DNA of 64,000 nt. It comes from Epithemia pelagica (lineage: Eukaryota > Protista > Bacillariophyta). Shown here one piece after another: positions 11,862 through 64,000 of this stretch. Numbering within the stretch: position 1 is the stretch's first letter; the number at the start of each line of letters is the position of its first letter. The position numbers and the translations under genes were made by a program. The DNA lies in assembly GCA_946965045.2 (NCBI GenBank), contig OX337236.1, positions 1,612,001-1,676,000 of the forward strand, given 5' to 3'. Under the pieces are notes generated by a model. That model was given only the letters and a program-made list of their open reading frames with translations. It made no database searches and was not told where the DNA came from.

Positions 11862-12665
11862 ACTTCTACGACTTGTTGTGACACGAACAGCAACCGACCG
11901 TTGGGAAGAACGAATGTATCGTGATATATCCATGACATGCACGATGCCACAAGGAGCGAAATGGAATGAGGGAGAAATGTCTCGCCACAATAGCACAACA
12001 ACAACGTATGAGGGTAGTAGAAAATAAAACAGACAAATGTTAAAAATGAATATTGAAATTTGTTTCCAATAGATGATTGTTGAGCGGAGTAAAGTTTCTT
12101 GCCAATGGAGGAGTACATTAACTTTCCAAGGAACAAGTCATGCGCATGAAACGTGACAGCATAGGTCCCTGTGAGGAGTGATGGTATATGGCCAGAGTTC
12201 TATTCCCAGCGAGTTCTTTTTTCTGGCCGCCAGCGGAGTGTGTTCCTGGAACCTTCATCGTTCTTTCGTTTGTACGCATGCGTAGAACGAACACCAAGGT
12301 TCCAAGTGATTGGCGGGTACAACATACATCCAAGGACATGGGAGTATGACTCTGGAATAGGCAAGTGATCATGATGAAAGAGAAAAGCAAGAGAAAACCT
12401 TCCATACATAGATCTCATAGCTCGTGTGATCCGCTTTTGAATTTTAAGTTTTCAAATTTCAAAACTTGCAATCGGAAGTGTTTTGACCACCACGGAAAAA
12501 TTTCAGGAAAGCCGAAGCAATCAGCGATGAGATGTCAGAGGACAACGCGTCGCCACAGCAACATCTTTTACCATCACCGTAGGAGGCTTTGAGTCCAATT
12601 CCGAGGACGTTTGGGCGTTTGTCTCTGATTGACTGATTCTCGTGGAACGGCATCATCCATCAATC

Positions 12666-13709: not shown

Positions 13710-14597
13710 CTATCTTGCTCTTCTACTTTGAATGGCGCGCTCATCAACACTCTTCTGTACCAAGCGACCCGCTTCTCTGAGGTCTGGTGTATTGGTTCCT
13801 TCCACCAAAATTTTGGAATCATCAAACTTTTGCAAGGCCTGTTTGGAGAAAGCGTCAATGGCTGTCCAGGGGCCAGGATATTCTCGAATCACATAGCCCG
13901 ACAGTTGTGAATTGTAGGTCAGGGGCTTGAGATAGTACGCCATGGTCGCTGCCCCGGGTACGCTGTCGCGATCTTTGGCAAAACCGTTCACAATCACCAC
14001 CTTATTTCGTCCCGTCTCAACCAGCGCTTTGGCAATTTGATAGTCGGTTCGTGTTGAGGGTGCCAAGAGGACACAAACCACATTCGGGGACAGATTCTGT
14101 GGCGCACCGTCGCGAAGGGACCAGCATTTGCCACCGGCAATAGATTTTGCTTTTTGCAAGAATCCAGCCGATGCTGCAGAACTGATCAAGAGACGTACTT
14201 CCGATCCAATCAGTGGCAAGGAAATGGATCCAATCAATTTCTTTCCAAAGTCTAGATTGGCCTTGTCGACTTCCTGTGCTGATTGACGTGATCCGTCACC
14301 AAGCTTGTTCAAGGCTCCAAGTGGAGGCAATTCGCACTCGATCATGGGAAATGATGGGTTCTTGGGAGATCCCAAAGCTCTTTGGATAGACGCAATGGCA
14401 CGGTTGGATCGATCATTGGTTGAAGTGGGTATCTTGGGTGCACCGCCTCCGGCCAAGCCTCCAAATACCATATTCAACGAACAACCGCAACCATTCTTTG
14501 GACCAGCTATTCCAAATCGTTGGTGCGATCGGACAAAAGCCTGAGAGGCTGTGGCAAGCACCAACACAGCCAAAGAGACTATCAGCAACCTCGTCAT
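13710..14597 (-). CDS. DUF1995-domain (LPA3-like) protein with bipartite plastid-targeting signal
   Basis: Signal peptide ending 'ASQAF', plus 'IECELPPL', 'VVIVNG' and 'YYLKPL...GYVIREYPGPW'. Confidence 0.7.
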   Translation of the reverse strand: MTRLLIVSLAVLVLATASQAFVRSHQRFGIAGPKNGCGCSLNMVFGGLAGGGAPKIPTSTNDRSNRAIASIQRALGSPKNPSFPMIECELPPLGALNKLGDGSRQSAQEVDKANLDFGKKLIGSISLPLIGSEVRLLISSAASAGFLQKAKSIAGGKCWSLRDGAPQNLSPNVVCVLLAPSTRTDYQIAKALVETGRNKVVIVNGFAKDRDSVPGAATMAYYLKPLTYNSQLSGYVIREYPGPWTAIDAFSKQALQKFDDSKILVEGTNTPDLREAGRLVQKSVDERAIQSRRAR

Positions 14598-39200: not shown

Positions 39201-40251
39201 CATGCGGACGTATGATCGGTGACTTGCTGGATGCATTCTATCGGTTGTCGTCGTCTTCTTCTCAAGGTCACTTCCTCTGTTTCGGATGCCAAATAAGAAA
39301 GACTTCAAAACCTTGCCGTCGGTCCATAAAAAAAGCCAACTCATCCCTGCCCGCCCATTCCCTCACGGTACACTTGATTCTTAGGCATCCTTGATGGTCG
39401 CAAGAGAGCTGGCACCTTTCGTTGGAGGTGCACACCGGCTTGAGTGTGTCATGGTGGTGTTACGCAGTGCAAAATGACCGTGGTGGTGTCCCTACGAAGT
39501 AAGAATCACTGTAGAAAAAACAGTGGGGGTATGAAAAGCACGGGCCACTACGGTTACCCATATCGATTGATGGAGCTCGTACACGTAGTCTAGAGGGCAA
39601 TATTATCGAATTGGGCCTTTTTCTGGTTATTACTGTACTCGTACTTGTAGTCTTACGCAGGGTTGTGAAGTCATAAGTCACTAATTCCAAAGTCAACACC
39701 GAATTTGACTTGATTTTGCCACTTTTTTGCAAGTCCCATTCCATTCGTCATGCCGTAGAATACGGAATGACAATTCCTTATTCAATTCTATACTCTATAC
39801 CACCAGTACTTATTCTGTTCAAGTCAAGTCTCCTTCGTTATTTACATGACTTTCATTCCCCAAGTCAATCTCATTCACTATGACCGGACGACTTGTCATT
39901 CCAAAGTCTTCTTCTATTAGGCCCAAAGTTCCCTACTTGAAGTCATTATAGTAAGTCATTTACCAAAACTCCCTAAGTCAGTTATTCCATTCTCCTAAAT
40001 TACAGACACACCGATAATCACCGTGTATTCTTCATACAAAGCGCCTCGAAACTGACAAAACAAACAACAATCAACTGATGACCTACACATACCTTCTTCC
40101 CCAACACCTATCAGAATGACCCTTGACTCTTGGCCTTGTTTCGTCGTGTCCTCACTTCTCACTCCTCACAGTTAGAACGACAAGCAGCCAGCATCCTTTC
40201 ACCACCGTCCCCCCTTTGTCACTTTGCACCCTGCACCTCTTGCGCCCAACC

Positions 40252-43200
40252 ATGGCTCCAAAGAGGAAGTCGTTGAGCCGAACATCGAGCAAGAAAAGCT
40301 CGACTGATGATCCACCATTGGATGCTGCAACGGTGAACAAGATCAAGGCTCGCCAATCTCTATACATACAGGAGAAGGAGCTCATTCCCATTCTTTCCTC
40401 CCCACTTCCCAAATTTTTCACTCAGAATCCTACTCCTCTATGGAAATGGGGGATCCACATCGATTGGGAAAAGTTCGACAAGTTTCACGAAGAATCCATT
40501 GACGAGAAACGAGACTTCTCAATGTACGAGGGAGTCACCAGCTTATTCGAATCCTACGAACATGTTGTAATCAAGAAATTATGGCCGAAGAAAAAACCTT
40601 CTCAACAAGGCAGGAAGAAACCGGTTGTATCGAAGAAGCTAGCCAAGTACCAAGATGTCTGTTGGTTCTGCATCATATGCCCTGTTTGCTTCCACGATCC
40701 GGATACAACATTGGCCAAATCCATCATCGGTTGCTCTGGCAAAACTTCCAATATCTCCCAGCACCGAACTGGGAGTCACCAAGATTTGACGTTTGACGAC
40801 GAGAAACCGGACACACAGGCTACTCTTGGCCAATATGCAACGAATCAAATGGTAACACGATCAGGTATTCGCAAGGAATTCCGACGACTCATATATGAGT
40901 TCGTGAATGATTGCTGCCTACCAGCATCGACAGTAGAGAAGCCAGAATTTCGGTCACTACTTCAGTTCGCAACCTCCCATGGCCTCCAGCTCAAAGATTC
41001 CAAGGCTGAAAATATGAGTCGAAGGGAGATCACCAAAATGCGCTTGAATTCTTATGAAGAGTTTGTCTTCGTCGTGTCAGAACTTGGCAATAACGTTCGC
41101 AATGCTTATCACAAGCTATGCAAGCAGAACGTACCTTTTGGGACCTTATGCCACGACATATGGAACGGCCCCAGGGGCGACATTCTGGGTGTCACTATAA
41201 TGTTCACAGATCCCAGAAACTGTGAAGTTTATAGAATTCCCATTGGCCTGGCTGAAATACAAGGTCACTCGGCTGCCGATGTCGCCAAGTTGACACACGC
41301 TCTACTAAATCAAGTCGGATTTTCTCAGAGTGACTTATACGCCTCTGTAAACGACAACACGGCATCAGCCGTGCTTGCAGGCAAGTACATTCTCGGCATT
41401 CCACGTCATGGGAGTGGTAGTGGCAGTAAAGGCAAGTGTGACATGCACAAGGCCGAACTGATTCTGAAACATGCCACCGGCTTGGTACAACGAAGCAGAA
41501 ACAAGATTATCATCGACGCCAATCCAGAATTTGTTGAAGCCTATGGTATTGCAAAGAAGTTTGCTGCATGGCTCATGAGCAGTCGAGCACCACAACGATG
41601 GGAGAATTTCAAAGATTTCGCGAACAAAATGGGAGCTGTGATCATCATGATTCCACTCCCCAATGAAACAAGGGTATCTGGATGCATCCTACTCATCATT
41701 GGCCTCCTTCGCAGCAAATGGATTATGGATGAATACGCTGCAAGTACTATAAATGGAGACCTAGGCTTCAAACGCCGCTATCCCAATCCGGATGTATGGG
41801 AAGTTCTTTCCCAATTTGAAGCCATTCTATCCCCTCTAAAGGCAGTGTCTCTATCGCTCCAAGTCGATGCTCCTGGTTCTTCATCTGCGTCCTTATTGGA
41901 GTTGTACAGTGCCCGTCATGTTGCCGAGTTGATGGAAATTGAGGACATCGAATGCTTGCCCATGAAAGAAAATTTGGACAACCCAATCAAGAAGTGGGAT
42001 GCCACAAAGAACATGGATGACCTGGACGAACAACGCAACCCAATTGCCTTTGAGGACTTGCATTCGACTAGTCGGAAACTCATCCGTCGGGTTATCAAAG
42101 AGTACAAGACGTACGTTCTCGAAGAAAAAGACGAAGATGCAGAGAAAGCCATGTGCTGCAACCCACTCCTGGCCAATATTTTTGAAGGACTCTTCAAAGA
42201 TTTGGATGCCTATGACGACGACAATATCTCCCGTGTTAAGACGATGTTTGTGGAGGATATGGTTGCCAAGTTTTCGAACAAACGAGTTTCGCGCCTTGGT
42301 ACAGTGTTTGCAAAACAGACTGGCAACAGTGGGGGAACAACAGACTCCACACCTACTACGAACTCGAGTGCAAAACCTAAGAAAAAATCGAAGGTGGCAA
42401 GTGCCTTTGCCAAGATCAGAGAAGCACGAGAGAAAAAACAACAGGACTTGCTTGGACTGTCTGGCAAGGCCAGTAACGCTGGCGCAGAGGCAAAACTTGT
42501 TGCGGACCTCCGCGAGGCATGCAAACAATGTTGGACCGATTTCAAGAAAATGTGTGACCTCATGATTGATCACAGATGGGAGGTGGTGATCAAGAAGTAT
42601 TCGACAGATGAATTCAAGGAGGAATCTCAGAAATGGGGGCGTTTGGAATGGGACGAGTTCAATGAACACTGCCGTGACAACTACTACCTTGGCATAGCAC
42701 GATATTTCGACGTCATGAAATGGTGGAAGGTTCATGGTTCAGAATATCCTTTCATGCTCCCTTCAGCTCTCATTTGGCTTACCAAACCTCCTACTAATGC
42801 CTTTCAAGAACGAGTGTTCTCTGCAAGCACTTGGTATCACCAGAACAAACTGATGGGCAATATGTATGAGAAACACAACGAGATGCGAACTTTGGAAAAG
42901 TTGACTAGGCCGTTGCGCAAATTGATTCTTCAGAGAGAAGCCGAAATAGAGAAAGAAGAAACAGAGAAAAAGGAAGTGATCGACATGACTGCGATAGACG
43001 AGAGTGGCACAAAGGGAGACGGCACAAGCAGCCAAGTCAAAGCCACTGCAAGTGTTGCAGTTGCAGTAGCCAGTCAACCAGTGGCTTCTGAAAGCACTAC
43101 CGAAACACCGTTGCGACAAAGAACAAGTAGTGGAACAGGAAGTGGAACAGGAAGTGGAACATCAAGTGAACCGATCAATATAACAGCGGCAAGTACACCA

Positions 43201-43788
43201 GCACAAGACATTAGCACTGGGGCCACAGACCAGCTATCCAGCACGGAACAAGATGGGAAATTGCCGTTTCAAGAGAAGAATAAGACGACACCAGTGGACC
43301 TGGACCAACATGGGCGGCAGATGCAAGGTCGACAGTTACAAATGGCAATGGCCATTCAGAAGGCCGCTATGGAACTACAAGAGTTCGGTAAGAAGAAGGT
43401 TATGGATGAAGGAACAAGCCAATACAATGACAGGCAAGATTCGGTCTCAGTGGCGGAGAGGACGACAACAACAAGATCTGTTCCGGTCGATCCAGAAGTA
43501 GCCGGCAACAGCACGACAGCCGAAGAAACAACAAAATTGATGAAGTTCTACGCTGATACAGACAATGATGATGATCTTGCTCCTCCTCTAGAAGCAGACG
43601 ACATTGTGGTCGTTCAAATTCCTATCGACGAGCAAGACAAAGACCAGGATGAGGGAGACGATGGAGATGACGGTGATTGTGGATTGTTGAAAGCCTTGAA
43701 GGAACAAATGGAAGAAGTAAAGGTAGAATCTACCGGCATTGCGATCAGCCCTACGGCTGTTGGTCTGTTGAAGGACGACGCCAACTAA
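40252..43788 (+). CDS. hAT transposase (BED-like finger, DDE core, dimerisation domain, long acidic tail)
   Basis: C/C/H/H finger near the N-terminus, 'CHDIW', 'NDNTA', 'CDMH' and 'KWWK...YP...PPTNAFQERVFS'. The frame stays open for 70 more codons after TAA 43786-43788, ending at 43998. Confidence 0.9.
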   Translation: MAPKRKSLSRTSSKKSSTDDPPLDAATVNKIKARQSLYIQEKELIPILSSPLPKFFTQNPTPLWKWGIHIDWEKFDKFHEESIDEKRDFSMYEGVTSLFESYEHVVIKKLWPKKKPSQQGRKKPVVSKKLAKYQDVCWFCIICPVCFHDPDTTLAKSIIGCSGKTSNISQHRTGSHQDLTFDDEKPDTQATLGQYATNQMVTRSGIRKEFRRLIYEFVNDCCLPASTVEKPEFRSLLQFATSHGLQLKDSKAENMSRREITKMRLNSYEEFVFVVSELGNNVRNAYHKLCKQNVPFGTLCHDIWNGPRGDILGVTIMFTDPRNCEVYRIPIGLAEIQGHSAADVAKLTHALLNQVGFSQSDLYASVNDNTASAVLAGKYILGIPRHGSGSGSKGKCDMHKAELILKHATGLVQRSRNKIIIDANPEFVEAYGIAKKFAAWLMSSRAPQRWENFKDFANKMGAVIIMIPLPNETRVSGCILLIIGLLRSKWIMDEYAASTINGDLGFKRRYPNPDVWEVLSQFEAILSPLKAVSLSLQVDAPGSSSASLLELYSARHVAELMEIEDIECLPMKENLDNPIKKWDATKNMDDLDEQRNPIAFEDLHSTSRKLIRRVIKEYKTYVLEEKDEDAEKAMCCNPLLANIFEGLFKDLDAYDDDNISRVKTMFVEDMVAKFSNKRVSRLGTVFAKQTGNSGGTTDSTPTTNSSAKPKKKSKVASAFAKIREAREKKQQDLLGLSGKASNAGAEAKLVADLREACKQCWTDFKKMCDLMIDHRWEVVIKKYSTDEFKEESQKWGRLEWDEFNEHCRDNYYLGIARYFDVMKWWKVHGSEYPFMLPSALIWLTKPPTNAFQERVFSASTWYHQNKLMGNMYEKHNEMRTLEKLTRPLRKLILQREAEIEKEETEKKEVIDMTAIDESGTKGDGTSSQVKATASVAVAVASQPVASESTTETPLRQRTSSGTGSGTGSGTSSEPINITAASTPAQDISTGATDQLSSTEQDGKLPFQEKNKTTPVDLDQHGRQMQGRQLQMAMAIQKAAMELQEFGKKKVMDEGTSQYNDRQDSVSVAERTTTTRSVPVDPEVAGNSTTAEETTKLMKFYADTDNDDDLAPPLEADDIVVVQIPIDEQDKDQDEGDDGDDGDCGLLKALKEQMEEVKVESTGIAISPTAVGLLKDDAN

Positions 43789-44075
43789 CCCATAGAGGGA
43801 ACTTCCAAGGATGCTCCCGTTATCACGACTCCTCTGGCTGTTGCCACTGATTTCTCAACTCCTGAAGCAAGTGAAAAACAAAATGCAAGCACGAGCAAGA
43901 AACAAGATGGGAAAAGGAAGGATACGAGTAGCAAGAAAACCCATAGTCCATCGAGCAAACGTACCCGCTCCAACACCACACTTAAATCACCGCCGTGATA
44001 CACTTATTCCATTTATGATTCACTAACAATGAGGCAATGAAGTTGCATGTTTGCATGATTAACCGTTAAGTTTTA

Positions 44076-45843
44076 CTAGGATCTTTGATAAATGGTCGCC
44101 ATCATAGGAATCAGTGTCTTCAAATTATTACCGGAATGTGTGTCGTTATAGGAATCGAGTGCTGATAAAACAGTGGGTTGGGTCTCATTGGATTGGAGGA
44201 GCTGGCCCAAGGAACCAAAGAGGGGATTGATCTGTTTCCATATGTTTCGTGGAATCCATGAGGTGAGAAGGTGCGAACATCTTAGAGAGTCGCTCTCCAT
44301 TTTGTAGCCATGGGTCCATTCCAAATGAAAACACCATCGGAAAACATGAATATCACAGGGTATTCCTTCATCTCGGGAAAACGCCGAAGATAGAACAATC
44401 ATGACAGTTTTGTGGCCAATCCCAATCAGCTGTTCAAATTGGCGAGCGCAAATATTGGACGGAATGGTCCCATCGTGGCGCTGTATGAAATAGTCAGCTG
44501 AGTTGACTATTCTTTCGGCATTGTTGTAGTAGCGACCAGCATCAGAAATTATGGAACAGAATGCATTCATGCCATAACGGGATGCGATGTCATAACAAGC
44601 CGTTGCAGATGTGAGGCCAATGGAGAAAAGGCGTGGGATAATTTTGCTGAGTTGTGCATCTGACGTACTCGAACTCATGATGATGATGATCAGGCACATG
44701 AAAGCTCAGTCTGGTTGTTGGGATATGTCGTCAGAGTTCGATTGGTTGTGGAGATAATCGTCCATCCATCGTTCCCAATTGTCTCGTGGGGAAATGATGT
44801 TCTTATCGAGAAGGTGTTGCCGAAAATCAAGAAGACCGGAAAGAAGATTGAGTTGTTTTTCCTTTATTTGTGGAGCCAATGGTGGAATAGGAGCCAGATA
44901 TACATTTCGGAGGGGTAGTAGTTTCGGTGGTTCACCAGGCATGTGGCGCTTCTCCGTCGAATCATAACCTAGTTTGTTGTATTGAATTTTTATTTTGGAT
45001 CGGGAGGCGGATTGAATCAGTTGTGAAATTAGTCTCGTTCGTTTCCGGGTAGAGTAGGGGTGGAACAAGGATGTATTTGTTGTGGTTTTGCGTGTGGAAG
45101 AGGATGGAGAGGATGAATTATTTGGTTTGGTGGTCGGAGACCCAGCAGGGGAAGTGATTTGATTGTCATGTTCTTGGATTATGGACAGAACTTCCTTTTC
45201 GAACATATCGATGAAAGGGAAAATGGTATCGGGAACAAATCTGAATAGGGGACCTTCCTGGCCAACTGTAATTGGAGTTTGCACAACGAAACGCGTGTCG
45301 GATCGAATCATCCAAGACATTATGTGGGTGAGTGGTGAGATTGAGCAAGTATCTCTTTGGTCCAGGGTATATTCGGCACAGAGTGTGGTAAGGAAGGTCG
45401 AACAGTCTTGTCGGTAGAATGTAGGCAAACAAAATATCTCCATGTATGGATTGGCTCCTTCTGGGACTTCATAGTTGATGGTATATGGCGAACTGTCTGA
45501 AGCTGTGGCTTCGAGAATACCGAGGGAAAATTGTTTTATGACCTCGCTGGAAGGGATGCTGTTGACTTGGCAGATGTGTGTCCTTGACATGAAAGTATTG
45601 ACTTGCTTGATTGTAATTGTCTTGTTCGAACGCATTAGCCATCTTAGAAGTATATCGGAAATAGCATCCACTAAGACGTTGTCTTCGTCAACCATTTCCT
45701 CGGGTTCAGATACAGATGAAGGATGCCCTTCAAGTTCCTCTTCTAGGAATCTGATTAAAAGTATAGGGACAGTGAATTATGTATCGAACTCGACATCGAG
45801 ATTCGAATACAATGTTGTTCTTGTTCGTGCTTACACAAGCCAT
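44076..45843 (-). pseudogene. N-terminally extended endonuclease III (HhH-GPD, NTH1-like), disrupted copy inside hAT-1
   Basis: 'LIGIGHKT', 'PCDIHV' and 'LTSWIP..W.QINPLFGSLGQLL'; colinear with 60339-62180. In-frame TGA at 44706-44708 and a frameshift in the homopolymer run at 45757-45760. Confidence 0.82.
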
Positions 45844-46729
45844 TCTGTACATTGTAAATTTGCACAGGTGCAGAGGTGCAGAGGTGCAGAGTGCAGAAGA
45901 GTTGGCGCAGACACAGTACAGAGTGCAGAGTGCAGAAGCACAGCGATTCCTTAACCATTAGTGCACAGTTGTGTCTTGCATTATGTGACTTAAGTCACTT
46001 TGACTTAAACGGTATAAGTCAGGGAATTAACAGGGAATTATGAAGAATTTAGCATTAAAGTCAAAGTCAAATTCCATCATGCTTGTATTGTTATTAAGTC
46101 GCATGAGGGAGACGGGGGGAATTGACTTGACAAATTAATTCTAAGTAAATTCTATAGCAATGGGTAGTAGACTTAATAGCTTAATAGTCATTAAGTAAAT
46201 TTACTGGAAGTGTTACAGTGACTTGCTAATCACTAAGTAAAGTCGTCCATAAATTTAAATAGTACTTGAAAGTAGCTAAGTCCATTCACTATGTCATATA
46301 TAGTTACTTCACAACCCTGGTCTTACGAGTACTCGTACGATAATCTTTTTCTCATTCAATATCCGTAATCCGTAGGGCGTACGTTGATTGGTAGTTTTGA
46401 GGACTACAATAATCCATGAGGATGAGGAGGATTTTGCAAAATATCCGTAGTTACCATGGCTAACTTGCTACGGACATCGTCAACATGAACGTGATGTTCT
46501 ACGTGTTCGTACTCCTCTTGGTAAGTATACCGCTTGATCAAGTACAAGTGTATCAAGCTAGTAACCCATCCGCATCCGCACCCTCTTGCAACAGAGAGTC
46601 TACAAAATACTGGAAAAGAGCAGAATGAGAATGAACATGGAAAATGTGGCTTACATAATATACACAAATACGCATTAGAAGACCAGACGACAGACCCCCA
46701 TAGGTCTCCCTCGTGAATTAGCGGACAAT

Positions 46730-54014: not shown

Positions 54015-54731
54015 ATGTCGACGCAAGAACAAGACCCCCAACCTACTGGAACCGAAGACGCCAACACGAATTCTGGCGAACCAAAGAAGCAGAAGGGTCG
54101 GAAGAGGGGATCCGCGAGGTGGGGCCAAGAGGAGACCGATCTCATGCTGACGATCGTTGAAGAACTCTGTCCTGCGGGCGACGACATGTGGAAGGAGGCT
54201 GCAGGAGAACTCTACGAAGCTTCCAACGGCAAGTATCGCCGGGACGGTAACGCTGTGAAGCGCAAGTTTGAGAAGATGTGCATGGGAAAGAAGCCAACGG
54301 GTGCAACAACCCCGCCTAATACCGTGGTACGAGCCAAGCACATCAAGGATCATATTGCTTTGAAAGAGGGTGTTGGGCACTCAGGGCAGAATGACTCTGA
54401 TGATGATGAAAATAGCCAAGAGGGCAACAAAGAGGAGAAAGGAGTGCAGATTCTCAAGCGTTCGGAGTTGGGCCGTCCCTTGACCAAGAAGCGCAAATCG
54501 ACGTTGCTGAACGAAGCACTCGATCGTCTTGGTGAGCAGCAGAAGGAGTCTACAAAGATCCTTGCTAATGCCTTGGTCAAGGGACTGGCCACTGTAGGTG
54601 CAGCCCCTGCTGCAGCGACTTCTACAATGGATCGCATTGATGTGGTGGAAGACAAGCTGCAGCGTATGGACGAGAAAATGGACAGCAAGCTGGCTGTCAT
54701 TCTCAAAGCGATCCAGCAGAACGAGAAGTAA
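54015..54731 (+). CDS. Myb/SANT-like DNA-binding partner protein of Harbinger
   Basis: 'WGQEETDLMLTIVEELCPAGDDMWKEAA...RDGNAVKRKFEKM'; coiled-coil C-terminus. Confidence 0.82.
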   Translation: MSTQEQDPQPTGTEDANTNSGEPKKQKGRKRGSARWGQEETDLMLTIVEELCPAGDDMWKEAAGELYEASNGKYRRDGNAVKRKFEKMCMGKKPTGATTPPNTVVRAKHIKDHIALKEGVGHSGQNDSDDDENSQEGNKEEKGVQILKRSELGRPLTKKRKSTLLNEALDRLGEQQKESTKILANALVKGLATVGAAPAAATSTMDRIDVVEDKLQRMDEKMDSKLAVILKAIQQNEK

Positions 54732-54782
54732 TTTTCTATGGAAAACAACCTAGAGTAGAATAAACGAAGATTCTATTTATTA

Positions 54783-56066
54783 CTAGTCATTTATTTCATC
54801 GTCATCATCATCATCAGAATATTCTTCGTCGTCATTCCAGTCGTGATCGTTTGCTTGTCCTTCTTCTTGTGCTGCTGTAGATTGTTGCTGTTGTTCTTCT
54901 TGATAGTTTTCCCTCACGTAGTTAAAATACGTGCGAATCTGATTGCGATCCATGGTCTCTGTTCTGAAATTCAGCAGAAGGACAGAGCACCAAAGGATCA
55001 ATTCGCGACGCATTTGACACGTTGGGAGTTTACTTACAACACGACGAAAAACTTTCGTCAGACAACCGTTGCCCCACTCACTCGCCTGACGGAGGTGCGT
55101 CAGCAATCGTTCGTATTCCGACTTGTCCATCGTGTTTTCGTTGCCCTCCTTCAGTTTGACAAGCTTACCACTCATGTCTCCACTTGTCTTGAATGCCGAA
55201 TCGCAAACAGCCAGATATGGGTCCGGCAACTTCTTGATATGGTCGTAAATGTTCCCCCAGTAACATGACTTGCTGTCATGAAAGTTACCAGGGGCGTTTA
55301 CGACACAATCAATCACTTTTCCCGAAGGTGACCAAACAAAAATGCAGTTGCGATTCGTATCACCCGTCCATCCATTGTAATCTCGGTTTTGCTTCTTGGG
55401 ATCAGGGTCGTTGAGGGTGACCAGCTTTAAACCATCCATCATCGCAATGACGTAGCGGATGGCTTCGAAGGCTGCAGTCAGACTCGCTTGCTCCTGTAGA
55501 TTGTCTTCCGACATGTCCCAAAATACACGAGCTTTCTCGTTGTTCACTAGGGCCTTGAGGATGCTTCCAAGGCCAAGATAGACGCAGTTTTTGAATTGGG
55601 TGGCGAGTGCACCAAACTGGCAGTGTAGGTTCTTGACTTCACTGCGACATGTCAACCACTTCACCGCCATCACCAAAATATCGTAAGCGTCAAATCGTCG
55701 GCGTTGAATGTCTTGCTCCTGCGGTACACCCTGTCGCGGATCAATACTTGAGGATATGATTGATTGCTGTGTCAACTCAACCAATTCGTTGATCGCCTCC
55801 CTTGAGAAGGCGGTGAAGTGGAGGAATTCAAGGTCATCTCCATGGTGACGGACGCGGTACCAAAAAGAGTCCTTGCTTTGTCCAACGACACGTCGTCGAT
55901 AACGACCTTGTACCGCTCGGACAACCGTATCTGTCTGTTGGGAAGCAGCAACAGCAGCAACAGCAGAAACTGAAGATGCTAAGCTGTCATGGTGATGGAT
56001 GACAGCTGTAGCGATAGCAAGCAACGCCTTCTTCTTACGTTCAGCGAAAGATTCGGAAGTCGACAT
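54783..56066 (-). CDS. Harbinger DDE_Tnp_4 transposase
   Basis: 'MMDGLK', 'YNGW', 'NAPGNFHDS', 'VCDSAF' and 'RQASEWG'; uninterrupted 427-aa ORF. Confidence 0.9.
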   Translation of the reverse strand: MSTSESFAERKKKALLAIATAVIHHHDSLASSVSAVAAVAASQQTDTVVRAVQGRYRRRVVGQSKDSFWYRVRHHGDDLEFLHFTAFSREAINELVELTQQSIISSSIDPRQGVPQEQDIQRRRFDAYDILVMAVKWLTCRSEVKNLHCQFGALATQFKNCVYLGLGSILKALVNNEKARVFWDMSEDNLQEQASLTAAFEAIRYVIAMMDGLKLVTLNDPDPKKQNRDYNGWTGDTNRNCIFVWSPSGKVIDCVVNAPGNFHDSKSCYWGNIYDHIKKLPDPYLAVCDSAFKTSGDMSGKLVKLKEGNENTMDKSEYERLLTHLRQASEWGNGCLTKVFRRVVSKLPTCQMRRELILWCSVLLLNFRTETMDRNQIRTYFNYVRENYQEEQQQQSTAAQEEGQANDHDWNDDEEYSDDDDDDEIND

Positions 56067-57609: not shown

Positions 57610-59301
57610 CTAATATTCTAGTGATACACCGGGTCTCGGTTGTTTCTCAGCACTTTTGCGAATAGATCGCCGACTTCACGGAAAGTCACACACATCATGA
57701 TCGTGAGTGTTTCTTGTTCCAAAGGTTTATGGGGACTACCAGAGAACGGATGATACGACAACTTACTTTCGATTCTTGATGTGAAACGGATGATGACGAC
57801 CAGTGGCGTCACATTTTCGACAGGTTTGCGTGGTGTGGAACATGACTCCTTTCTCATTCACACTAAACTGCAATCGAAACCCATGAGCCTTACCCCAACA
57901 TTTCTCTAGAGCCAGGAATTCATCTTCCGTGAGAATTTCAACAACTGAGTAGTTTTCACAGTCTAACAATTCATTTCGGTCCAGCATGGGAGAGGATGGT
58001 TCCACCGCAGCCGCGGCAACTGCTGGTCGAGGAAGATCCTCCATTTCTCGAAACAATGCTAGTTGTCGGTTGAGTTCAGCTGGGCTTCCGATGCCGGCAG
58101 CTCTCATAGCTTCCACAGTCTCAGGATCTGGACCTTGACCAGGAATCATGCCGGGGACAACAGATTCCGCGAGAGGTCGACCAGGAGACTCTGGGATGGT
58201 TGCCGCAACTGGTGAGCAAAGCAAGCTTTCACCATGAGGAACGAGAAGTTCCGGAGATTCACCGTACAAGTAGGTCTCCAGGTGCGGTGGCAACAAGGCC
58301 AGACGATGTGCGTCGCACAACAAGCACGCCGAGTCTGGAGGGGGAACATTTCCTCCTTCACCAGTCTTGATATAACGGCGCCATGCGTAGCACCACGAAC
58401 GAGGCAGGACATAGTAGTTACCATGAATCAAGGGACACTGTCCAGGCACTGTGGCGGTGAGAATGGAATGGGCAGGGACCCCCGTACGACGTTTGTAGAA
58501 CTGCCGAATGTCTTCGTTGGCCAGAGGACGCCTTCGTTCCAACTTTTCTTTTTCCAGCCGGTCACTCTCGTTTCTCTTTGCAGTCTCAATTTCGAGAGTG
58601 CACTGAAGACATTCACCCACGGCAGATTCAAGCTGTGTCGAATCTGGGTACAACTTCTTAAGAATCTTCCATGCCTGACGATCCAAAACACGGCGGCGGG
58701 CTCGCGCAGACTTGACACTGGTGCAACGTTGGAGGTTCTGGTGTTCGCAGAGTAGATCTATGTTCGCGTTTGGCCAAGGTGGGTTGGCATCGGAGAGCTT
58801 GCGGTCGCGGAGTCTTTTCTTCTTTTTCGATAGCTTTTGAGGACGGCAAGACTGTTCTTGTTGGACTTCCAGCCATCGAAGAGCCGCTTTGCACCATGAT
58901 TTGGAAACAATGAATCCGGTGGCAGGTTCGGGGCTACTCAATGCACGCGCAACGACCAGAAGCTCCATATTTCGAAGATGCTCGAATGTATACAACGGCT
59001 TTTTGATATTCGAACCGAGCTTTCGTCCAACAGATTTTCCTCCTTTGGGCGGCGCGGATGGTGATGATTCAAAGCCCAGAGTGTATTCGGAGGGATAAAT
59101 CTCTTCCGCAAAATGCGAAACCACTGTATCAATCAATTCAGGCTGAGCATAAAACTTGCAAGTCATCTGAACAGCCGATAGATCGTATGCTCGAAGATAT
59201 GTCAAAATGTTGACTTGAGTATCAATTGGCAAATTCAAAAGGCATGCATTGGCTTCTTGACTTCGATTTGTTGATTTAGATGATGGAGGGTTTGACGTCA
59301 T
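57610..59301 (-). CDS. F-box-like domain plus USP48-like DUSP repeats protein
   Basis: 'LLNLPIDTQVNILTYL..YDLSAVQMTCK', 'IVSKSW...W...NIDLLCEH' and 'YVLPRSWCYAWRRYI...LLCDAH'. The 3' end assumes an intron at 57674-57766; otherwise the stop is at 57763. Confidence 0.6.
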
Positions 59302-60338
59302 TGTGTAAATTGAGCTGAGTTGAGTGGATTTTGTTTGAAATATGGGTACAATAGGATGTATGCGAATGGAGAAAACAAAAGGTACACGTTTGGGAGAAAG
59401 CAAAATTCAAAAATGTTCGGTAGCAGAGAGGGGAAGTTGGCCGAAAGAGAATATACAAGAACAAAGGACGAATGAAGTAGTCTCAAAAACAAAACGTTTG
59501 TTTTTGATGAGAAATGGAATCTATGATATGTACAAAGGGTGGGAAAGCTTGCTTGAATCGATGTATGAGAAGATTCGTTCGAACAGGGAAGGCTTTGTTG
59601 CGATGAGATGATGGCGAGATGCGCTTCCGACCAGGGTGTGGAAGTTGGAAAATCAGCCATTAGACTTAACTTCCCAACTAATAATTCATTAGACAGTTTA
59701 CTGTGATGCGACTTGTACCCACTAGTTAATGCAACATGTATGATTAACTTAACTTAAACTAATCAAATCACAAAACCACGATACAGAATGAACTTGCAAC
59801 TAATAGTCTAACACGACTAAGGTACTAACTTGACTAGATTAAATATGGTTCCAATGAAGAACCTGCAACTTAACTTAGACTAACTTTGAAAGTCGTAGTT
59901 TCTTTTCTGAGTCTGCAACTAGACTAAACAAGTCCAAGTTGCAACTTTGCCCCTTGTAATTAAACTTCATCCCTCTGTCACCTCCATAGTTACAACTATT
60001 AGTTGCAACTTCTTTGTTGTCGTAGTCACAAACAACAACTTTTATTCAGAGGAACCATTCACTCTTATCTGTTTCTACGTATTTATTCACACTCTTCCTG
60101 CACATATTTACCAATATCACTCCCAGAGGAGTAGAACGTTCACGACTCACGACAGAGGTTCAACCAACACTCACAACTCTCAACCTCTCACAACATTCAC
60201 CAATCCACTGTCACCTGTCACCTTTACCTCTGTTCCTTTCCATCAACGACACAACCTTCAGTTTTCCTTCCCTTCTCATTTCTCATTGCCACTATTATTT
60301 CCCCATCCTCAACCCCATGCATCTTATATTCAAGTACA

Positions 60339-62180
60339 ATGGAAGCATCAGATGACCGTACCATCAACCTCGATGTGACTTGTCACCAAGTCATCACTGT
60401 GACCCATATTCCAATGTCGTTCATGACCATGATGCTAGAGGACTCAACTTTGCTAACCACTCCCTTGGAAAAGGCGACACAAGACTTGGCAATGGAGAAC
60501 ATAAAAGATGTGGTGTTGCTGTGGCTTACCCGGTACAATGGAAGTCTGCACTACCAACAAGTCGACTATCCATCCAACACAAGCCACCCTTGTTTATCTC
60601 CCAGTCGCATGTCATTCGAAAGCTTACTGAACACTGTCTGTCGAATAGTGTTTACGGGTCTGTATTCCCAAGAAGATGACTCATTCCAAGTCACATACGA
60701 GATGAACCCCCCCACCGACGACCTCCCCTTCATCTCCATTGAAGGAAAATGCCGACCAATATTTTCTTTGCCTTCCTCCAATGGTCTCAGAGCTTTTCAA
60801 AAATTCAATGCCGATTACCATCAGCAAAACAACTACACTAAACTTTCCGTGGAATGGAATCTTCTAACCTGGATGACCCGACACAATGCCAGAATCCAGG
60901 TTAGAAATTCCTTTGACCTACGGACAGAGTGTCCTATTTGTATTAGTCCAAGCATCGACATCGTTGTTGAGGACATTGTTGCGCATACTAAGAAGAGCAC
61001 GAAGGAGGATGACCGTTACTCAATGAAACTGGATACAACAACGTCCCCTCCTCCTATTGATACAAGTCCTCCATCAACTCCAGTTGCCAAAGCTTCTCAA
61101 TCTACCATGGGCCCAAATAGCAACAACGCTTCTACTTCTGTCAACCATGAATATTGGGCTTCTTCTCCTGTCATTGATGAATATTGGACCAAGCGACAAT
61201 TTTCCCCCACTGCCCATGTCTTGACTCGGCAAAGAAAAACTGTTCTCTGCCATGCTTTATTGCAATCATGTTCCGCCAAGGAACAGATAGTCTATGGCGA
61301 CAGACACATGCCTGGGACACCTGCAATTACCAAACCTGTCATGACCAGAATGTTTCGCCCTTCCATCCCCATTAGAAACCAATCCACAATTGATTCCCGG
61401 CTGTTTTTACTTGATAATCTTTCCCATTTACGTCGGTATTTCCTTCAGTCTGGTTTGGAAGCCCCCAGAGACACATGGTCCGAATGGATTACCAACAATA
61501 TGTCGGAATATGAAGACTCTGACCCAGCCTTCATGTGTCTCATTGTTATCTTGATGAGCTCGGCCACATCAGATCAAAGTCTCTCTCAAGTGATCCCTCG
61601 CTTATTCCAATCGGGCATCACTAGTGCACAAGGAACAATTGAAGTGTCTACATATTTTGGGATGGATGTTTTCTGTACTTTGTTTGCAGAAACAGGACGG
61701 TATCGTGTCAATGCGGAACGCATAGTCAACGCCGCTGACTATTTCGTCCAGCGACACAAAGGTCGCATTCCTAAAGACATTTCCCTTACTGAGCTTATGA
61801 CCTTACCTGGAATTGGCCACAAGACGGGAACAATCATTCTACAAACGGCATTTGGCCGGACGGAAGGAATTCCCTCAGATATTCATGTTATCCGATCAAC
61901 TAAGGTTCTCAATTGGACGGAGTCTCATATCAATGACGGCATGGAATGCTCTTTGAACCTTCAATCATGGCTTCCTAAAGAACGATGGGAGGAAATCAAT
62001 CCTTTATTTGGTTCTCTAGGACAACTACTTAACAAATCACAGACCAGAAGCAAGTGCCAAGAACAAATGGAGTCTTTTATTGTGGCTCACTCTCATGACA
62101 AATCCGAATCTAAATCTCCAGCGAATCTCCGCCATCTCAAGTATTTCTTTCTGCAGTTGATAAAAGAATATACTAAATGA
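60339..62180 (+). CDS. N-terminally extended endonuclease III-like DNA glycosylase/AP-lyase (HhH-GPD), intact, lacking the 4Fe-4S motif
   Basis: 'ILMSSATSD', HhH 'LPGIGHKT' (catalytic Lys), 'GIPSDIHV' (catalytic Asp) and NTH1-like 'LQSWLPKERWEEINPLFGSLGQ'; 613-aa uninterrupted ORF. Confidence 0.88.
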   Translation: MEASDDRTINLDVTCHQVITVTHIPMSFMTMMLEDSTLLTTPLEKATQDLAMENIKDVVLLWLTRYNGSLHYQQVDYPSNTSHPCLSPSRMSFESLLNTVCRIVFTGLYSQEDDSFQVTYEMNPPTDDLPFISIEGKCRPIFSLPSSNGLRAFQKFNADYHQQNNYTKLSVEWNLLTWMTRHNARIQVRNSFDLRTECPICISPSIDIVVEDIVAHTKKSTKEDDRYSMKLDTTTSPPPIDTSPPSTPVAKASQSTMGPNSNNASTSVNHEYWASSPVIDEYWTKRQFSPTAHVLTRQRKTVLCHALLQSCSAKEQIVYGDRHMPGTPAITKPVMTRMFRPSIPIRNQSTIDSRLFLLDNLSHLRRYFLQSGLEAPRDTWSEWITNNMSEYEDSDPAFMCLIVILMSSATSDQSLSQVIPRLFQSGITSAQGTIEVSTYFGMDVFCTLFAETGRYRVNAERIVNAADYFVQRHKGRIPKDISLTELMTLPGIGHKTGTIILQTAFGRTEGIPSDIHVIRSTKVLNWTESHINDGMECSLNLQSWLPKERWEEINPLFGSLGQLLNKSQTRSKCQEQMESFIVAHSHDKSESKSPANLRHLKYFFLQLIKEYTK

Positions 62181-62282
62181 CTGTCAATATATTATATTTA
62201 CCAAAATGCACTGCGATTATGGATGTATAGTTTCCGTGACGTTTCTTCCATTGTCACCTTCAGTGACATTCGTGGTTGGAGA

Positions 62283-64000
62283 TCAACTGGTACCGTCATT
62301 GTCCGCACTTGAGAATTCCTTCTCTGCAAGTCTTGGGCTTCTTCTCGTTGGCGAGTCGTTTGGGGTTGGGGGTGGTTTGCGATTGTCTTTCTTGCGTGGT
62401 GTTCTAACCACAGTTCTTGCGAGTGCCTCAGAGAGTGAATTCTGCTTCGTCCGTTTCCTTCCTTTTTGAATAGTTGAAGAGGCTTTACGTTTCCCACTAT
62501 CTCCTTTCTTGCCTTCATTGACATTTGCAACGGGCAGACTAGCAACAGTCTTCTCCAACGCGGTTTGTTGAATGAGTTCATTCTTTCTTTCCTGGATGGC
62601 TTCTTTTAACGCCGTGTCAGAATCTTCCTTGTCTTCGTCATCGTCGTAAGGAGCAACAACTTTTCGATCCAAAGCCTCTAGTTGATCTTCATCTCGTGGA
62701 TCGTCTACCAGATCAACCAATTCGACGTCGTCCCATGTCGCATCGCTCACAACTGTCTTCTTATCAACCTTTTTGACCGACTTGAACTTGTAACTTGTCT
62801 CCGCCTCTATGCCGTGGGCACCAATAGTTCCGGACAGTTCGTAGAGTTCCAGCTTCGACGTTGCTCGTAGTACCGTTTCCATCCGAGTCATATCGGATTG
62901 TGTCGGTGTGGCTTTTTCCAGTGGGACAACAGGAACTTGTGTTCCTGCTGCCGGGGTGCGTTGTTGTGCGGTCTGTTGTACCTGACTGACTTCTTCCCCT
63001 TTAGATTCCTGGCTGAGATCTATCACCTTCTTTGCTTGGCGGCCACTGGCTGCCTTTTTTTCGTCGGAGGTCGCGCCTTCTTTGAGTAGCTTTTCATTCT
63101 TGACAATCTCAGAGCGCACCTCCCTTGTAATACTCTCCATAGTGCGCATTTCGAAGTTCTTGTCTAGTTGGCGTCTCATTAAGGGATTCCTATCCATGAA
63201 CGACGACCGAGAGAACACGCGTTCCTGGAACGCGTTTGTCGCAGGTTTCGATATCCAAATCAAGGCACTAGGAAAGAGTTTGGGGAATAGCATCTTGTTG
63301 TCGGACCACCATTTCAAGACGTCAAAATATTTCCCAACGACATGGAAATAGTGTTCCGTACAGGCCAACTTGAATTCTTGTTGTTTTTCAGGGTTCCACG
63401 AACCAGATAGTTTCAGAAATGCGGCAGTGGGATACTGGCGAATCAAGTCCTCCCAGGATCCATGGACAACGTTCTCGCAAAATTCGAGATAGCGTCCAAA
63501 CTGTTCATCACACATCTTGTATAGCTTGGCTCTATCAACTTGGTCATCTGTACTGGTACTTGTCGCCGTCGCCTCCATTAGTGCAGCATTTTCTTTCTCC
63601 TTGGTGATGCGATGTGTCTTGAAGATGTTAAAGCAGTCCATTACATTCGTGACAGCTTTTGGGACTGAAGGCTCTTCCTCTTCGTCCTCGATGATCTCCA
63701 CAGGTGTACTTTCCTTTTGTTGTTCACGTTCCTGCTGCTGATTCGACTTGGATTGGGGATTGGTGCCATTCTTCTTTGGCTGCGAGAACTTGCGGACAAT
63801 GTCCATCACAAATTCTTTCCGAATCCGTTTAAGACTCTCATCGTCGTAAACATTTATGGTTTTCAGTATGTTGGGACCATAAGATGCAAGGAAAGGATGT
63901 CCACACATGGCGTGTTCAGCGTGGGAGTCATGGCCTTCCTCAATGTAGTTTGTATATTCCACAAGTACTCGCTCGATCAACAATTGACTCTTTTCTGACA
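62283..64000 (-). CDS. hAT transposase, C-terminal part (5' end beyond window)
   Basis: 'YFDVLKWW...FPKLFPSALIWISKPATNAFQERVFS' is clearly homologous to the hAT-1 transposase. Confidence 0.88.
   Translation of the reverse strand, partial: SEKSQLLIERVLVEYTNYIEEGHDSHAEHAMCGHPFLASYGPNILKTINVYDDESLKRIRKEFVMDIVRKFSQPKKNGTNPQSKSNQQQEREQQKESTPVEIIEDEEEEPSVPKAVTNVMDCFNIFKTHRITKEKENAALMEATATSTSTDDQVDRAKLYKMCDEQFGRYLEFCENVVHGSWEDLIRQYPTAAFLKLSGSWNPEKQQEFKLACTEHYFHVVGKYFDVLKWWSDNKMLFPKLFPSALIWISKPATNAFQERVFSRSSFMDRNPLMRRQLDKNFEMRTMESITREVRSEIVKNEKLLKEGATSDEKKAASGRQAKKVIDLSQESKGEEVSQVQQTAQQRTPAAGTQVPVVPLEKATPTQSDMTRMETVLRATSKLELYELSGTIGAHGIEAETSYKFKSVKKVDKKTVVSDATWDDVELVDLVDDPRDEDQLEALDRKVVAPYDDDEDKEDSDTALKEAIQERKNELIQQTALEKTVASLPVANVNEGKKGDSGKRKASSTIQKGRKRTKQNSLSEALARTVVRTPRKKDNRKPPPTPNDSPTRRSPRLAEKEFSSADNDGTS

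What the first reader, a model, noticed from the sequence alone, without database searches (positions are those of the whole stretch)
59632..64000. Second, highly diverged hAT with the same cargo and the same convergent layout
Seen: the cargo proteins align along their whole length despite heavy divergence (IKDVVLLWLTR/ISDILLRWLMR, RHMPGTP/RHMPGEP, PRDTWSEW/PRDNWERW, INPLFGSLGQLL in both). The transposases share the PxTNAFQERVFS motif. The termini are related but distinct (CAGGGTGTGGAAGT vs CAGGGTTGTGAAGT). Inference: the pairing predates the split of these two families, so it looks stable and selected rather than a recent capture.
Basis: partly seen in the sequence, partly recalled or inferred. 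Interest (0 to 1): 0.85.

Follow-up and report, generated by a model that had tools for sequence, protein, structure and literature searches.

The report
Second hAT transposon carrying a glycosylase
This is a complete, intact-looking cut-and-paste (hAT) jumping gene in a diatom-type genome; its lineage has carried a DNA base-removal enzyme gene beside its transposase since before its families split, a pairing I did not find in the literature and whose role is untested.

Summary
DNA beyond the window end (locus L001, identical to the window over 13,662 overlapping bases) shows the right end ...ACTTCCACACCCTG followed by CTTCCGAC. That is the same 8 bases that flank the left end at 59624-59631.

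Element 2 is a 6,917-bp hAT transposon. It has perfect 14-bp terminal inverted repeats (TIRs) and a perfect 8-bp target-site duplication (TSD). It holds an intact 613-aa endonuclease III-like glycosylase gene and a convergent, intact 1,220-aa transposase gene.

I recovered 12 elements from 8 diverged lineages of the same assembly, all with this layout inside their own TIRs; ten have exact TSDs. The glycosylase and transposase trees share 4 of 5 internal splits, and the AU test does not reject one shared history. TIR variants follow the transposase tree.

Between families, synonymous sites are saturated (pS 0.78-0.85) while pN is 0.22-0.46. Within families pN/pS is 0.44 for the cargo and 0.35 for the transposase. 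So the pairing is old, co-inherited and under purifying selection.

The cargo keeps the catalytic Lys and Asp, lacks the Fe-S cluster, and has a duplicated N-terminal domain with no recognised fold. Its function is untested; I favour anti-silencing base excision (about 40%).

This scan had already noted hAT-plus-glycosylase elements many times on other DNA of this genome.

The parts
59624..59631 (.). Left copy of the 8-bp target-site duplication CTTCCGAC of element 2
   Evidence: The same 8 bases follow the right end at L001 16211-16218, which corresponds to window position 66549-66556, beyond the window.
59632..59645 (+). Left terminal inverted repeat CAGGGTGTGGAAGT of element 2
   Evidence: A perfect inverted copy lies at L001 16197-16210. 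The same 14-mer ends the related elements L002, L003, L004, L016 and L017.
59646..60338 (+). Left subterminal region and upstream region of the cargo gene, with short repeats GTTGCA / AAGTTG
   Evidence: The hexamers GTTGCA and AGTTGC occur 8 and 7 times in the left 400 bp and 3 times each in the right 400 bp, against 4 and 3 times in 5.6 kb of interior. They repeat the inner part of the TIR.
60339..62180 (+). Cargo gene, 613 aa: duplicated N-terminal domain (res 1-225), disordered linker (221-292), endonuclease III-like HhH-GPD glycosylase domain (about 297-565) and C-terminal helices
   Evidence: Pfam HhH-GPD. Closest solved structure is human NTHL1, E 3e-19; Foldseek rmsd 1.7 A over 166 columns. 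Lys495 (GIGHKT) and Asp514 (IPSDIH) are kept, and there is no Cys cluster after the GQ motif. AF2 model mean pLDDT 78.
62181..62282 (.). 102-bp spacer between the two convergent stop codons
   Evidence: In the other lineages the spacer is 38-159 bp.
62283..64000 (-). C-terminal part of the hAT transposase gene; the whole gene is L001 11945-15607 (1,220 aa, intact) and runs 1,945 bp past the window end
   Evidence: Pfam Dimer_Tnp_hAT, 28-29 bits against a cut-off of 21.4. Matches Hermes transposase at the SERTFS motif.
39658..46319 (-). Element 1, the comparison element: 6,662-bp hAT with TIR CAGGGTTGTGAAGT, TSD GTCTTACG, transposase 40249-43788 (+), cargo 45695-44076 (-) with one in-frame stop at 44706-44708

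Best explanation
Window 59632 to the window end is the first 4.4 kb of a complete 6,917-bp autonomous hAT DNA transposon. It has 14-bp terminal inverted repeats, an 8-bp target-site duplication and subterminal transposase-binding-type repeats. It carries two convergent intron-less genes, each read inward from one end. One is a BED-finger/DDE hAT transposase of 1,220 aa. The other is a 613-aa protein whose C-terminal half is an endonuclease III (NTH1)-derived DNA glycosylase/AP-lyase that has lost the iron-sulfur cluster. Its N-terminal half is a tandemly duplicated domain found only in this protein family. The glycosylase gene entered this transposon lineage once, before the split that separates element 1 from element 2. 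Since then it has been inherited together with the transposase and the TIRs, under purifying selection, and whole two-gene units are still transposing. All of this is shown. What the glycosylase does is inferred. Most likely (about 40%) it removes a modified base, 5-methylcytosine or a derivative, from the element's own DNA. The N-terminal domain would target it there, and the effect would be to counter CpG-methylation silencing, as TET/JBP and VANC do for other transposons. The confidence given here is for the shown part.
For: Ends: right TIR plus identical TSD; the window and L001 are identical over 13,662 bases. Twelve elements (ten aligned in full, plus L016 and L017) from 8 lineages of the same assembly have the same gene order inside their own TIRs. 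Ten have exact 8-bp TSDs that differ from locus to locus; two (L005, L016) have a TSD off by one base. L013 and L014 differ at 3 of 6,798 bases but have different TSDs, which indicates recent transposition of the whole unit. Co-divergence: the identity matrices are parallel; the ML trees share 4 of 5 splits; the AU test on cargo data does not reject the transposase grouping (p 0.376); Mantel r is 0.74, reached by 32 of 40,320 permutations. TIR variants follow the transposase tree: CAGGGTGTGGAAGT in E2/L003/L004, and a shared CAGGGTTGTGAA core in E1/L013/L015 (L013's left end reads CAGAGTTGTGAA). Selection: between families pS is 0.78-0.85 against pN 0.22-0.46. Within families pN/pS is 0.44 for the cargo (p 0.003) and 0.35 for the transposase (p 3e-9). 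Enzyme: nearest solved structure is NTHL1, and the catalytic Lys and Asp motifs are kept in nearly all of 28 members. The family is distinct: 41 representatives at E<1e-30, then a break in scores (145.7, 136.7, 134.7, 130.2, then 116.9 and 108.6 bits) down to generic HhH-GPD proteins that match only the glycosylase part. For the inferred role: the copies carry a methylation footprint. CpG o/e is 0.69-0.80 against 0.91-0.93 in flanks, and C>T changes are 4 times more frequent per site at CpG. Transposon-borne demethylation enzymes have precedent (PMC12730594).
Against: There is no RNA evidence: the only runs holding the element are DNA-type contigs. No biochemical data exist. Known 5mC glycosylases (DEMETER/ROS1) keep the Fe-S cluster and have extra domains that are absent here. 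The TIR and the subterminal repeats contain no CpG, so transposase binding itself should not be methylation-sensitive at CpG. CpG depletion in the elements shows that deamination is not prevented. All eight lineages in the trees come from one assembly. The two contigs from other samples are too short to show a whole element. The tree has no root, so 'before the split' rests on the pairing being present in every sampled lineage.
Confidence: 0.85

Rival explanations
1. The glycosylase is a self-repair enzyme. It excises oxidised pyrimidines or T from T:G mismatches, the products of 5mC deamination, in element DNA, and so slows the mutational decay of methylated copies rather than removing the methyl mark.
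For: The closest relatives (NTHL1, bacterial endonuclease III, and the MIG thymine glycosylase 1kea) act on such lesions. The copies show CpG transition bias, so this damage is relevant to them.
Against: CpG o/e in the elements is still lower than in the flanks, so any protection is incomplete. A trans-acting repair enzyme would benefit the whole genome, which does not explain why it stays linked to a transposase. The host very probably has its own NTH: the nearest named cluster is a diatom AP-lyase family (a lead only).
Confidence: 0.2
2. The glycosylase/AP-lyase is a transposition cofactor. Through its N-terminal domain it binds the element ends or the transposase. It then nicks or processes DNA at the donor or target site, for instance helping repair of the 8-bp gaps or of the excision site.
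For: The linkage is strict and the cargo co-diverges with the transposase and TIRs, as expected of interacting partners. The family-specific duplicated N-terminal domain could read the family-specific subterminal repeats. The retained Lys predicts strand-nicking lyase activity.
Against: From established knowledge, studied hAT transposases such as Hermes and Ac need no second element-encoded protein. A glycosylase needs a damaged or modified base to start. The N-domain has no recognisable DNA-binding fold: best VIA-align Z is 5.6 and the helix-turn-helix-like hits reach only Z about 4, which is within noise.
Confidence: 0.13
3. The gene is a neutral passenger or a host gene that merely lies between two hAT ends. 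It does nothing for the element.
For: DNA transposons do capture host gene fragments. Some copies carry a broken cargo: element 1 has an in-frame stop, and 8 of the 15 listed cargo proteins of element 2's family are truncated.
Against: Eight lineages keep a full-length ORF after synonymous sites have saturated. pN/pS is below 1 within families. Catalytic residues are conserved. The position and orientation are the same in all elements. The TSDs put the gene inside each element.
Confidence: 0.03

Closest known systems
hAT superfamily DNA transposons (Ac, hobo, Hermes, Tol2)
   Same: 8-bp TSD; short TIR starting CAGGG as in Ac (from knowledge); subterminal short repeats; a C-terminal hAT dimerisation domain that contains the catalytic Glu motif; a BED-like zinc finger; a target site of the nTnnnnAn type.
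   Different: It carries a second, conserved, convergent gene for a DNA glycosylase. The transposase is about twice the usual length (1,180-1,345 aa), with long low-complexity tails.
Fungal DNA transposons that encode a TET/JBP dioxygenase, including hAT7 (PMC12730594)
   Same: A cut-and-paste transposon, in one case also a hAT, carries an enzyme that acts on DNA bases and is proposed to counter methylation silencing.
   Different: The enzyme class differs: an oxidase there, a base-excision glycosylase/lyase here. That paper reports frequent transfer of the TET gene between transposon superfamilies, whereas here the cargo co-diverges with a single transposase lineage.
Endonuclease III / NTHL1 (HhH-GPD bifunctional glycosylases)
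   Same: The fold, the HhH motif with the catalytic Lys, and the catalytic Asp. NTHL1 is the best sequence and structure match.
   Different: There is no 4Fe-4S cluster loop. The protein has about 300 extra N-terminal residues, including a duplicated domain of unknown fold. The gene sits inside a transposon.
DEMETER/ROS1 5-methylcytosine glycosylases of plants
   Same: HhH-GPD superfamily, a bifunctional Lys/Asp active site, and a role in removing methylation from transposons.
   Different: DEMETER/ROS1 keep the Fe-S cluster and have a split glycosylase domain plus the RRM_DME and permuted-CXXC domains. None of these is detected here, and they are host genes.
VANC anti-silencing proteins of VANDAL (Mutator) transposons in Arabidopsis (cited in PMC12730594, ref. 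8)
   Same: An element-encoded accessory protein that would act in a sequence-specific way on the element's own family to undo methylation.
   Different: VANC is not an enzyme of base excision and the transposon superfamily differs. The similarity is only in the proposed role.

Membership tests
hAT superfamily | 8-bp target-site duplication | tested here: met
   CTTCCGAC is on both sides of element 2. Nine further elements have exact 8-bp TSDs, and two (L005, L016) are off by one base.
hAT superfamily | Short terminal inverted repeats (about 10-25 bp, typically starting CAG/TAG) | tested here: met
   A 14-bp perfect TIR, CAGGGTGTGGAAGT.
hAT superfamily | C-terminal hAT dimerisation domain (Pfam PF05699) | tested here: met
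   28.3-29.5 bits against a cut-off of 21.4. A profile of 8 transposases hits Hermes transposase at E 1e-5.
hAT superfamily | DDE catalytic triad on an RNase H-like fold | tested here: inconclusive
   D360 (CHDIW), D426 (NDNTNSA) and E908 (NAFQERVFS) are invariant in 8 lineages. Only the Glu region aligns to Hermes. The two Asp are assigned from motif resemblance recalled from the literature, and no transposase structure was modelled.
hAT superfamily | N-terminal BED-type zinc finger | tested here: inconclusive
   C199, C202, H228 and H233 are invariant with CxxC...Hx4H spacing, but there is no Pfam zf-BED hit.
Endonuclease III / Nth family | HhH-GPD fold with catalytic Lys in the hairpin and catalytic Asp about 20 residues later | tested here: met
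   Pfam HhH-GPD. The profile alignment to NTHL1 puts GxGyKt on GVGPKM and gipsDvH on GIAVDTH. Foldseek rmsd is 1.7 A over 166 columns against 7rdt. The motifs are present in nearly all of 28 members.
Endonuclease III / Nth family | C-terminal 4Fe-4S cluster loop (Cys-X6-Cys-X2-Cys-X5-Cys) | tested here: not met
   There are 0-2 Cys in the 32-109 residues after the NPLFGxxGQ motif in the members where that motif was found. The protein is therefore Nth-derived but not a canonical Nth.
DEMETER/ROS1 5mC glycosylases | Fe-S cluster, split glycosylase domain, RRM_DME and permuted CXXC domains | tested here: not met
   Pfam finds only HhH-GPD and nothing in residues 1-394. There is no Cys cluster.
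DEMETER/ROS1 5mC glycosylases | Excision of 5-methylcytosine | not testable with these tools
   This needs an enzyme assay.
Transposon-borne anti-silencing enzymes (functional class: TET/JBP cargo, VANC) | The element-encoded factor lowers methylation or silencing of its own family | not testable with these tools
   Only indirect evidence: the copies bear a CpG-deamination footprint. No methylome or RNA data were available.

The most novel reading that the evidence does not exclude
A transposon lineage has turned a repair glycosylase into its own targeted DNA demethylase. The clusterless NTH-derived domain would excise 5-methylcytosine or another silencing base, and the duplicated N-terminal domain would direct it to the element's family-specific repeats. 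This would be a second, independent origin of base-excision demethylation outside plants, and it would be owned by a selfish element.
Probability: 0.3. Interest if true: 0.9.

Novelty: new variant of a known kind. Interest (0 to 1): 0.72.

Why it matters
Transposons that carry enzymes acting on DNA bases are rare, and they show how selfish elements fight host silencing. The literature I searched yielded TET/JBP dioxygenase cargo but no glycosylase cargo.

This element and its relatives give a clean natural experiment. Eight lineages are deeply diverged, so selection is visible. Very young copies exist. Some copies have lost one gene or the other. The same genome also holds a methylation footprint on the copies.

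If the enzyme removes methylated or modified bases, it would be a new route to active demethylation and a compact, possibly sequence-targeted base-excision module. If instead it assists transposition, it would be the first hAT known to me that needs a second protein.

Tried and rejected
A metagenome scan with the glycosylase-domain profile returned only generic endonuclease III genes at 27-34% identity and no family members.

Sequencing runs: only DNA-type contigs hold the element. There was no RNA run, no splice joints and no expression evidence. Contig depth cannot be read as copy number.

Between-family dN/dS by Nei-Gojobori is undefined because pS exceeds 0.75, so I report pN and pS instead.

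The N-terminal domain gave nothing usable. Pfam found nothing. Atlas feature search scored at most 0.83. Foldseek against the PDB had a best E of 0.02. VIA-align reached Z 5.6 at best, with helix-turn-helix-like three-helix hits near Z 4, all within the tool's stated noise range. Atlas structure search gave TM at most 0.36; its top row was a diatom DUF6824 cluster.

I considered whether the cargo might be a host gene outside the element. The TSDs reject this.

I considered independent captures by the two families. This is rejected by the shared unique N-terminal domain, the shared loss of the Fe-S loop and the congruent trees.

I could not test whether cargo-less relatives of this transposase clade exist.


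Full report
**What is in the window.** The left end CAGGGTGTGGAAGT is at 59632-59645, preceded by CTTCCGAC at 59624-59631. It is followed by about 700 bp without a long ORF. Then comes a 613-codon ORF on the + strand (60339-62180), a 102-bp spacer, and a long ORF on the - strand that starts beyond the window end (62283-64000).

Pfam finds HhH-GPD in the + strand protein and the hAT dimerisation domain in the - strand protein. It finds the same two families in the two genes of the element at 39658-46319.

That first element has the TIR CAGGGTTGTGAAGT at both ends and the 8-bp duplication GTCTTACG. Its cargo gene is interrupted by a single in-frame stop at 44706-44708.

By BLASTP:
- the two cargo proteins are homologous along their length: N-terminal part 22% identity, E 3e-13; glycosylase part 48% identity, E 3e-60;
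- the transposases are 32% identical, E 3e-47.

**The prediction.** An exact-protein look-up returned the source contig with flanks (L001, ENA analysis ERZ21939226). L001 is identical to the window over the 13,662 overlapping bases; window position = L001 position + 50,338.

The inverted copy of the 14-mer lies at L001 16197-16210 and is followed at once by CTTCCGAC. Element 2 is therefore 6,917 bp (window 59632 to the equivalent of 66548). The transposase ORF is complete and uninterrupted at 1,220 aa, L001 11945-15607.

**The family.** A protein search found a 99% copy and three diverged relatives of the cargo at 51, 40 and 34% identity. A profile search of 1.84 billion cluster representatives found 41 at E<1e-30. 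Below them the scores break (145.7, 136.7, 134.7, 130.2, then 116.9 and 108.6 bits) and the remaining hits are generic HhH-GPD proteins that match only the glycosylase part.

I fetched the genomic context for eleven further cargo proteins beyond element 2's own locus.
- Ten loci (L002-L005, L012-L017) lie in the same assembly. Each has the cargo followed by a convergent gene with the hAT domain.
- With elements 1 and 2 that makes twelve elements. I located their TIRs; ten have exact 8-bp TSDs that differ from locus to locus, and two (L005, L016) have TSDs off by one base.
- Element lengths are 6.6-7.0 kb. The layout is constant: TIR, 0.4-0.7 kb, cargo, a 38-159 bp spacer, transposase on the other strand, 0.35-0.6 kb, TIR.
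- L013 and L014 differ at 3 of 6,798 bases yet sit at different sites with different TSDs, so the two-gene unit has moved very recently.
- Across the ten exact TSDs, position 2 is T in 9 and position 7 is A in 7. From knowledge, this is the hAT target pattern nTnnnnAn.

Two contigs from other samples carry family members.
- L011 is from an ENA metagenome. It has a TIR-like CAGGGCTTTGAAGT 726 bp upstream of the cargo.
- L018 is from a JGI metagenome. It has a convergent partial ORF 35 bp after the cargo that is weakly similar to transposase tails, and GAAACTTCAAC repeats upstream.
- Both contigs are too short to show a whole element.

**Did the pairing predate the split?** For eight lineages (E1, E2, L003, L004, L005, L012, L013, L015) I built ML trees of both proteins.
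- They share 4 of 5 internal splits.
- They differ only in the placement of E1 and L012. That cargo branch has 52/48 support.
- The cargo data do not reject the transposase grouping {E1, L013, L015}: log-likelihood difference 0.58, AU p 0.376. The transposase data do reject the cargo grouping (p 2e-5). One history therefore fits both genes.
- Patristic distances correlate: Mantel r 0.74, reached by 32 of 40,320 permutations.
- The TIRs follow the same tree. CAGGGTGTGGAAGT occurs in E2/L003/L004. A shared CAGGGTTGTGAA core occurs in E1/L013/L015, although L013's left end reads CAGAGTTGTGAA. L005 and L012 have intermediate forms.
- The enriched subterminal hexamers echo the inner TIR of their own element. 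They are GTTGCA/AAGTTG in E2 and GAATTA(C) in L013/L015. AAGTCA is the top hexamer in E1 and also in L003, L005 and L012, so this feature tracks the tree less cleanly than the TIRs do.
- Elements 1 and 2 lie on opposite sides of the deepest well-supported transposase split (100/100).

The tree is unrooted and all eight lineages come from one genome. The claim is therefore that every sampled lineage on both sides of that split has the pairing.

**Selection.** Between families, synonymous sites are saturated even for the closest pair (pS 0.78-0.85), while pN is 0.22-0.46. A ratio cannot be computed, but amino-acid change is clearly held back.

Within families, two independent pairs (E2-L016 and L003-L017) were pooled.

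| Gene | Synonymous changes | Non-synonymous changes | pN/pS | p |
|---|---|---|---|---|
| Cargo | 22 | 34 | 0.44 | 0.003 |
| Transposase | 61 | 76 | 0.35 | 3e-9 |

Because inserted copies decay neutrally, these values are upper bounds for the active lineage. Decay is visible:
- 8 of the 15 listed cargo proteins of element 2's family are truncated;
- L002, L016 and L017 have broken transposases with an intact cargo;
- element 1 has the reverse pattern, with the transposase whole and the cargo stopped.

The copy in this window is intact in both genes and in both ends.

**The transposase.** Across the eight lineages the following are invariant:
- C199, C202, H228 and H233, with CxxC...Hx4H spacing (BED-like);
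- D360 in CHDIW;
- D426 in NDNTNSA;
- the CDMH motif;
- E908 in NAFQERVFS.

The last motif aligns with SERTFS of Hermes transposase. Assigning the two Asp to the catalytic triad rests on motif resemblance that I recall from the hAT literature, not on a structure.

**The cargo protein.** Its nearest solved relative is human NTHL1 (E 3e-19), followed by bacterial endonuclease III. The AlphaFold model has mean pLDDT 78. Its glycosylase part superposes on NTHL1 with rmsd 1.7 A over 166 columns.

The catalytic Lys (GIGHKT, K495) and Asp (IPSDIH, D514) motifs are kept in nearly all of 28 family members. That predicts a bifunctional glycosylase/AP-lyase. No member has the four-Cys Fe-S loop: 0-2 Cys follow the GQ motif. 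It is therefore Nth-derived but fails one defining feature of the Nth family.

Residues 1-225 form a confident alpha/beta domain (pLDDT 88). It is an internal tandem duplication: hhalign of the two halves gives probability 97% and E 3e-11. It has no convincing structural match. Residues 221-292 are disordered. A conserved segment with the motifs TR, SxSK, RHxPG and PRDxWExW links to the enzyme domain.

**Context for function.** The elements are CpG-poor: o/e 0.69-0.80 against 0.91-0.93 in flanking DNA. Among three copies of element 2's family, C>T changes are four times more frequent per site at CpG (21 of 510) than at other C/G (26 of 2,539). This is the footprint of cytosine methylation.

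That makes an anti-silencing or anti-deamination role plausible, but it does not show one. I found no RNA data.

My ranking:
- removal of a silencing base from the element's own DNA, about 40%;
- repair of deaminated or oxidised bases in the element, about 20%;
- transposition cofactor, about 13%;
- neutral passenger, about 3%;
- something else for the remainder.

**Comparison with the literature.** Five full-text searches found no paper that describes a hAT, or any DNA transposon, with an HhH-GPD glycosylase gene.

The nearest published analogue is the set of fungal DNA transposons, including a hAT group, that encode TET/JBP dioxygenases (PMC12730594). That paper reports frequent movement of the cargo between transposon superfamilies and proposes removal of silencing marks. 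The diatom case differs in enzyme class and in strict co-inheritance.

The library does not cover Repbase Reports or most subscription journals, so prior description cannot be excluded.

**Earlier notes of this scan.** The scan had already recorded hAT-plus-glycosylase elements many times on other DNA of this genome: 84 notes hold both words. They include element 1 of this window and a separate note on this cargo ORF. I used them as leads only.

Noticed in passing
window 44706-44708: Element 1's cargo gene has one in-frame stop codon (…SQQPD*AFMCLII…). Element 2 reads …DSDPAFMCLIV… at the matching place. Element 1's transposase, TIRs and TSD are intact.
   Followed up: yes
window 60339-61013 (cargo residues 1-225): The N-terminal domain is a tandem duplication of a unit of about 110 aa (beta-hairpin, two helices, a strand with W[LM]xR..G.I, a helix). 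hhalign of the two halves gives probability 97%, E 3e-11. No known fold matched.
   Followed up: partly
L013 7541-14338 and L014 7541-14338: Two copies of another lineage differ at 3 of 6,798 bases and have different exact TSDs (TTGTTCAC, ATTCAGGC). This is a sign of very recent transposition.
   Followed up: yes
L002 9945-13603, L016 7945-11610, L017 7824-11469: These older copies keep the cargo ORF whole while the transposase ORF is split into 2-3 pieces. This may be chance, since the transposase is twice as long, or the cargo may be useful in trans.
   Followed up: partly
elements E2/L002/L016 (L001 9294-16210 and copies): C>T and G>A changes are four times more frequent per site at CpG than at other C/G. 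CpG o/e is 0.69-0.80 in all elements against 0.91-0.93 in the flanks. The copies look CpG-methylated.
   Followed up: partly
window 54015-56066: A DDE_Tnp_4 (Harbinger-type) transposase ORF (54783-56066, - strand) lies beside a DUF6818 ORF (54015-54731, + strand), about 3.5 kb upstream of element 2. This comes from the precomputed Pfam labels.
   Followed up: no
window 57763-59403 and L001 16663 onward: Element 2 sits between two divergently oriented ORFs, about 230 bp upstream of the start of the 546-aa ORF at 59403. This is an insertion into a putative 5' intergenic region.
   Followed up: no
runs X4-X6 (biofilm metagenomes): Three biofilm metagenome runs hold 5-7% of the element's sampled words. 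Short contigs match parts of the transposase gene, which suggests that this or a related diatom occurs in those biofilms.
   Followed up: no
L005 7580-7587 / 14232-14239 and L016 5285-5292 / 12200-12207: In two older elements the flanking 8-mers match only after a shift of one base (GTTCAAAC/TTCAAACC and TCATGGAC/GTCATGGA). I have no explanation; there may be a 1-bp change at one junction.
   Followed up: no
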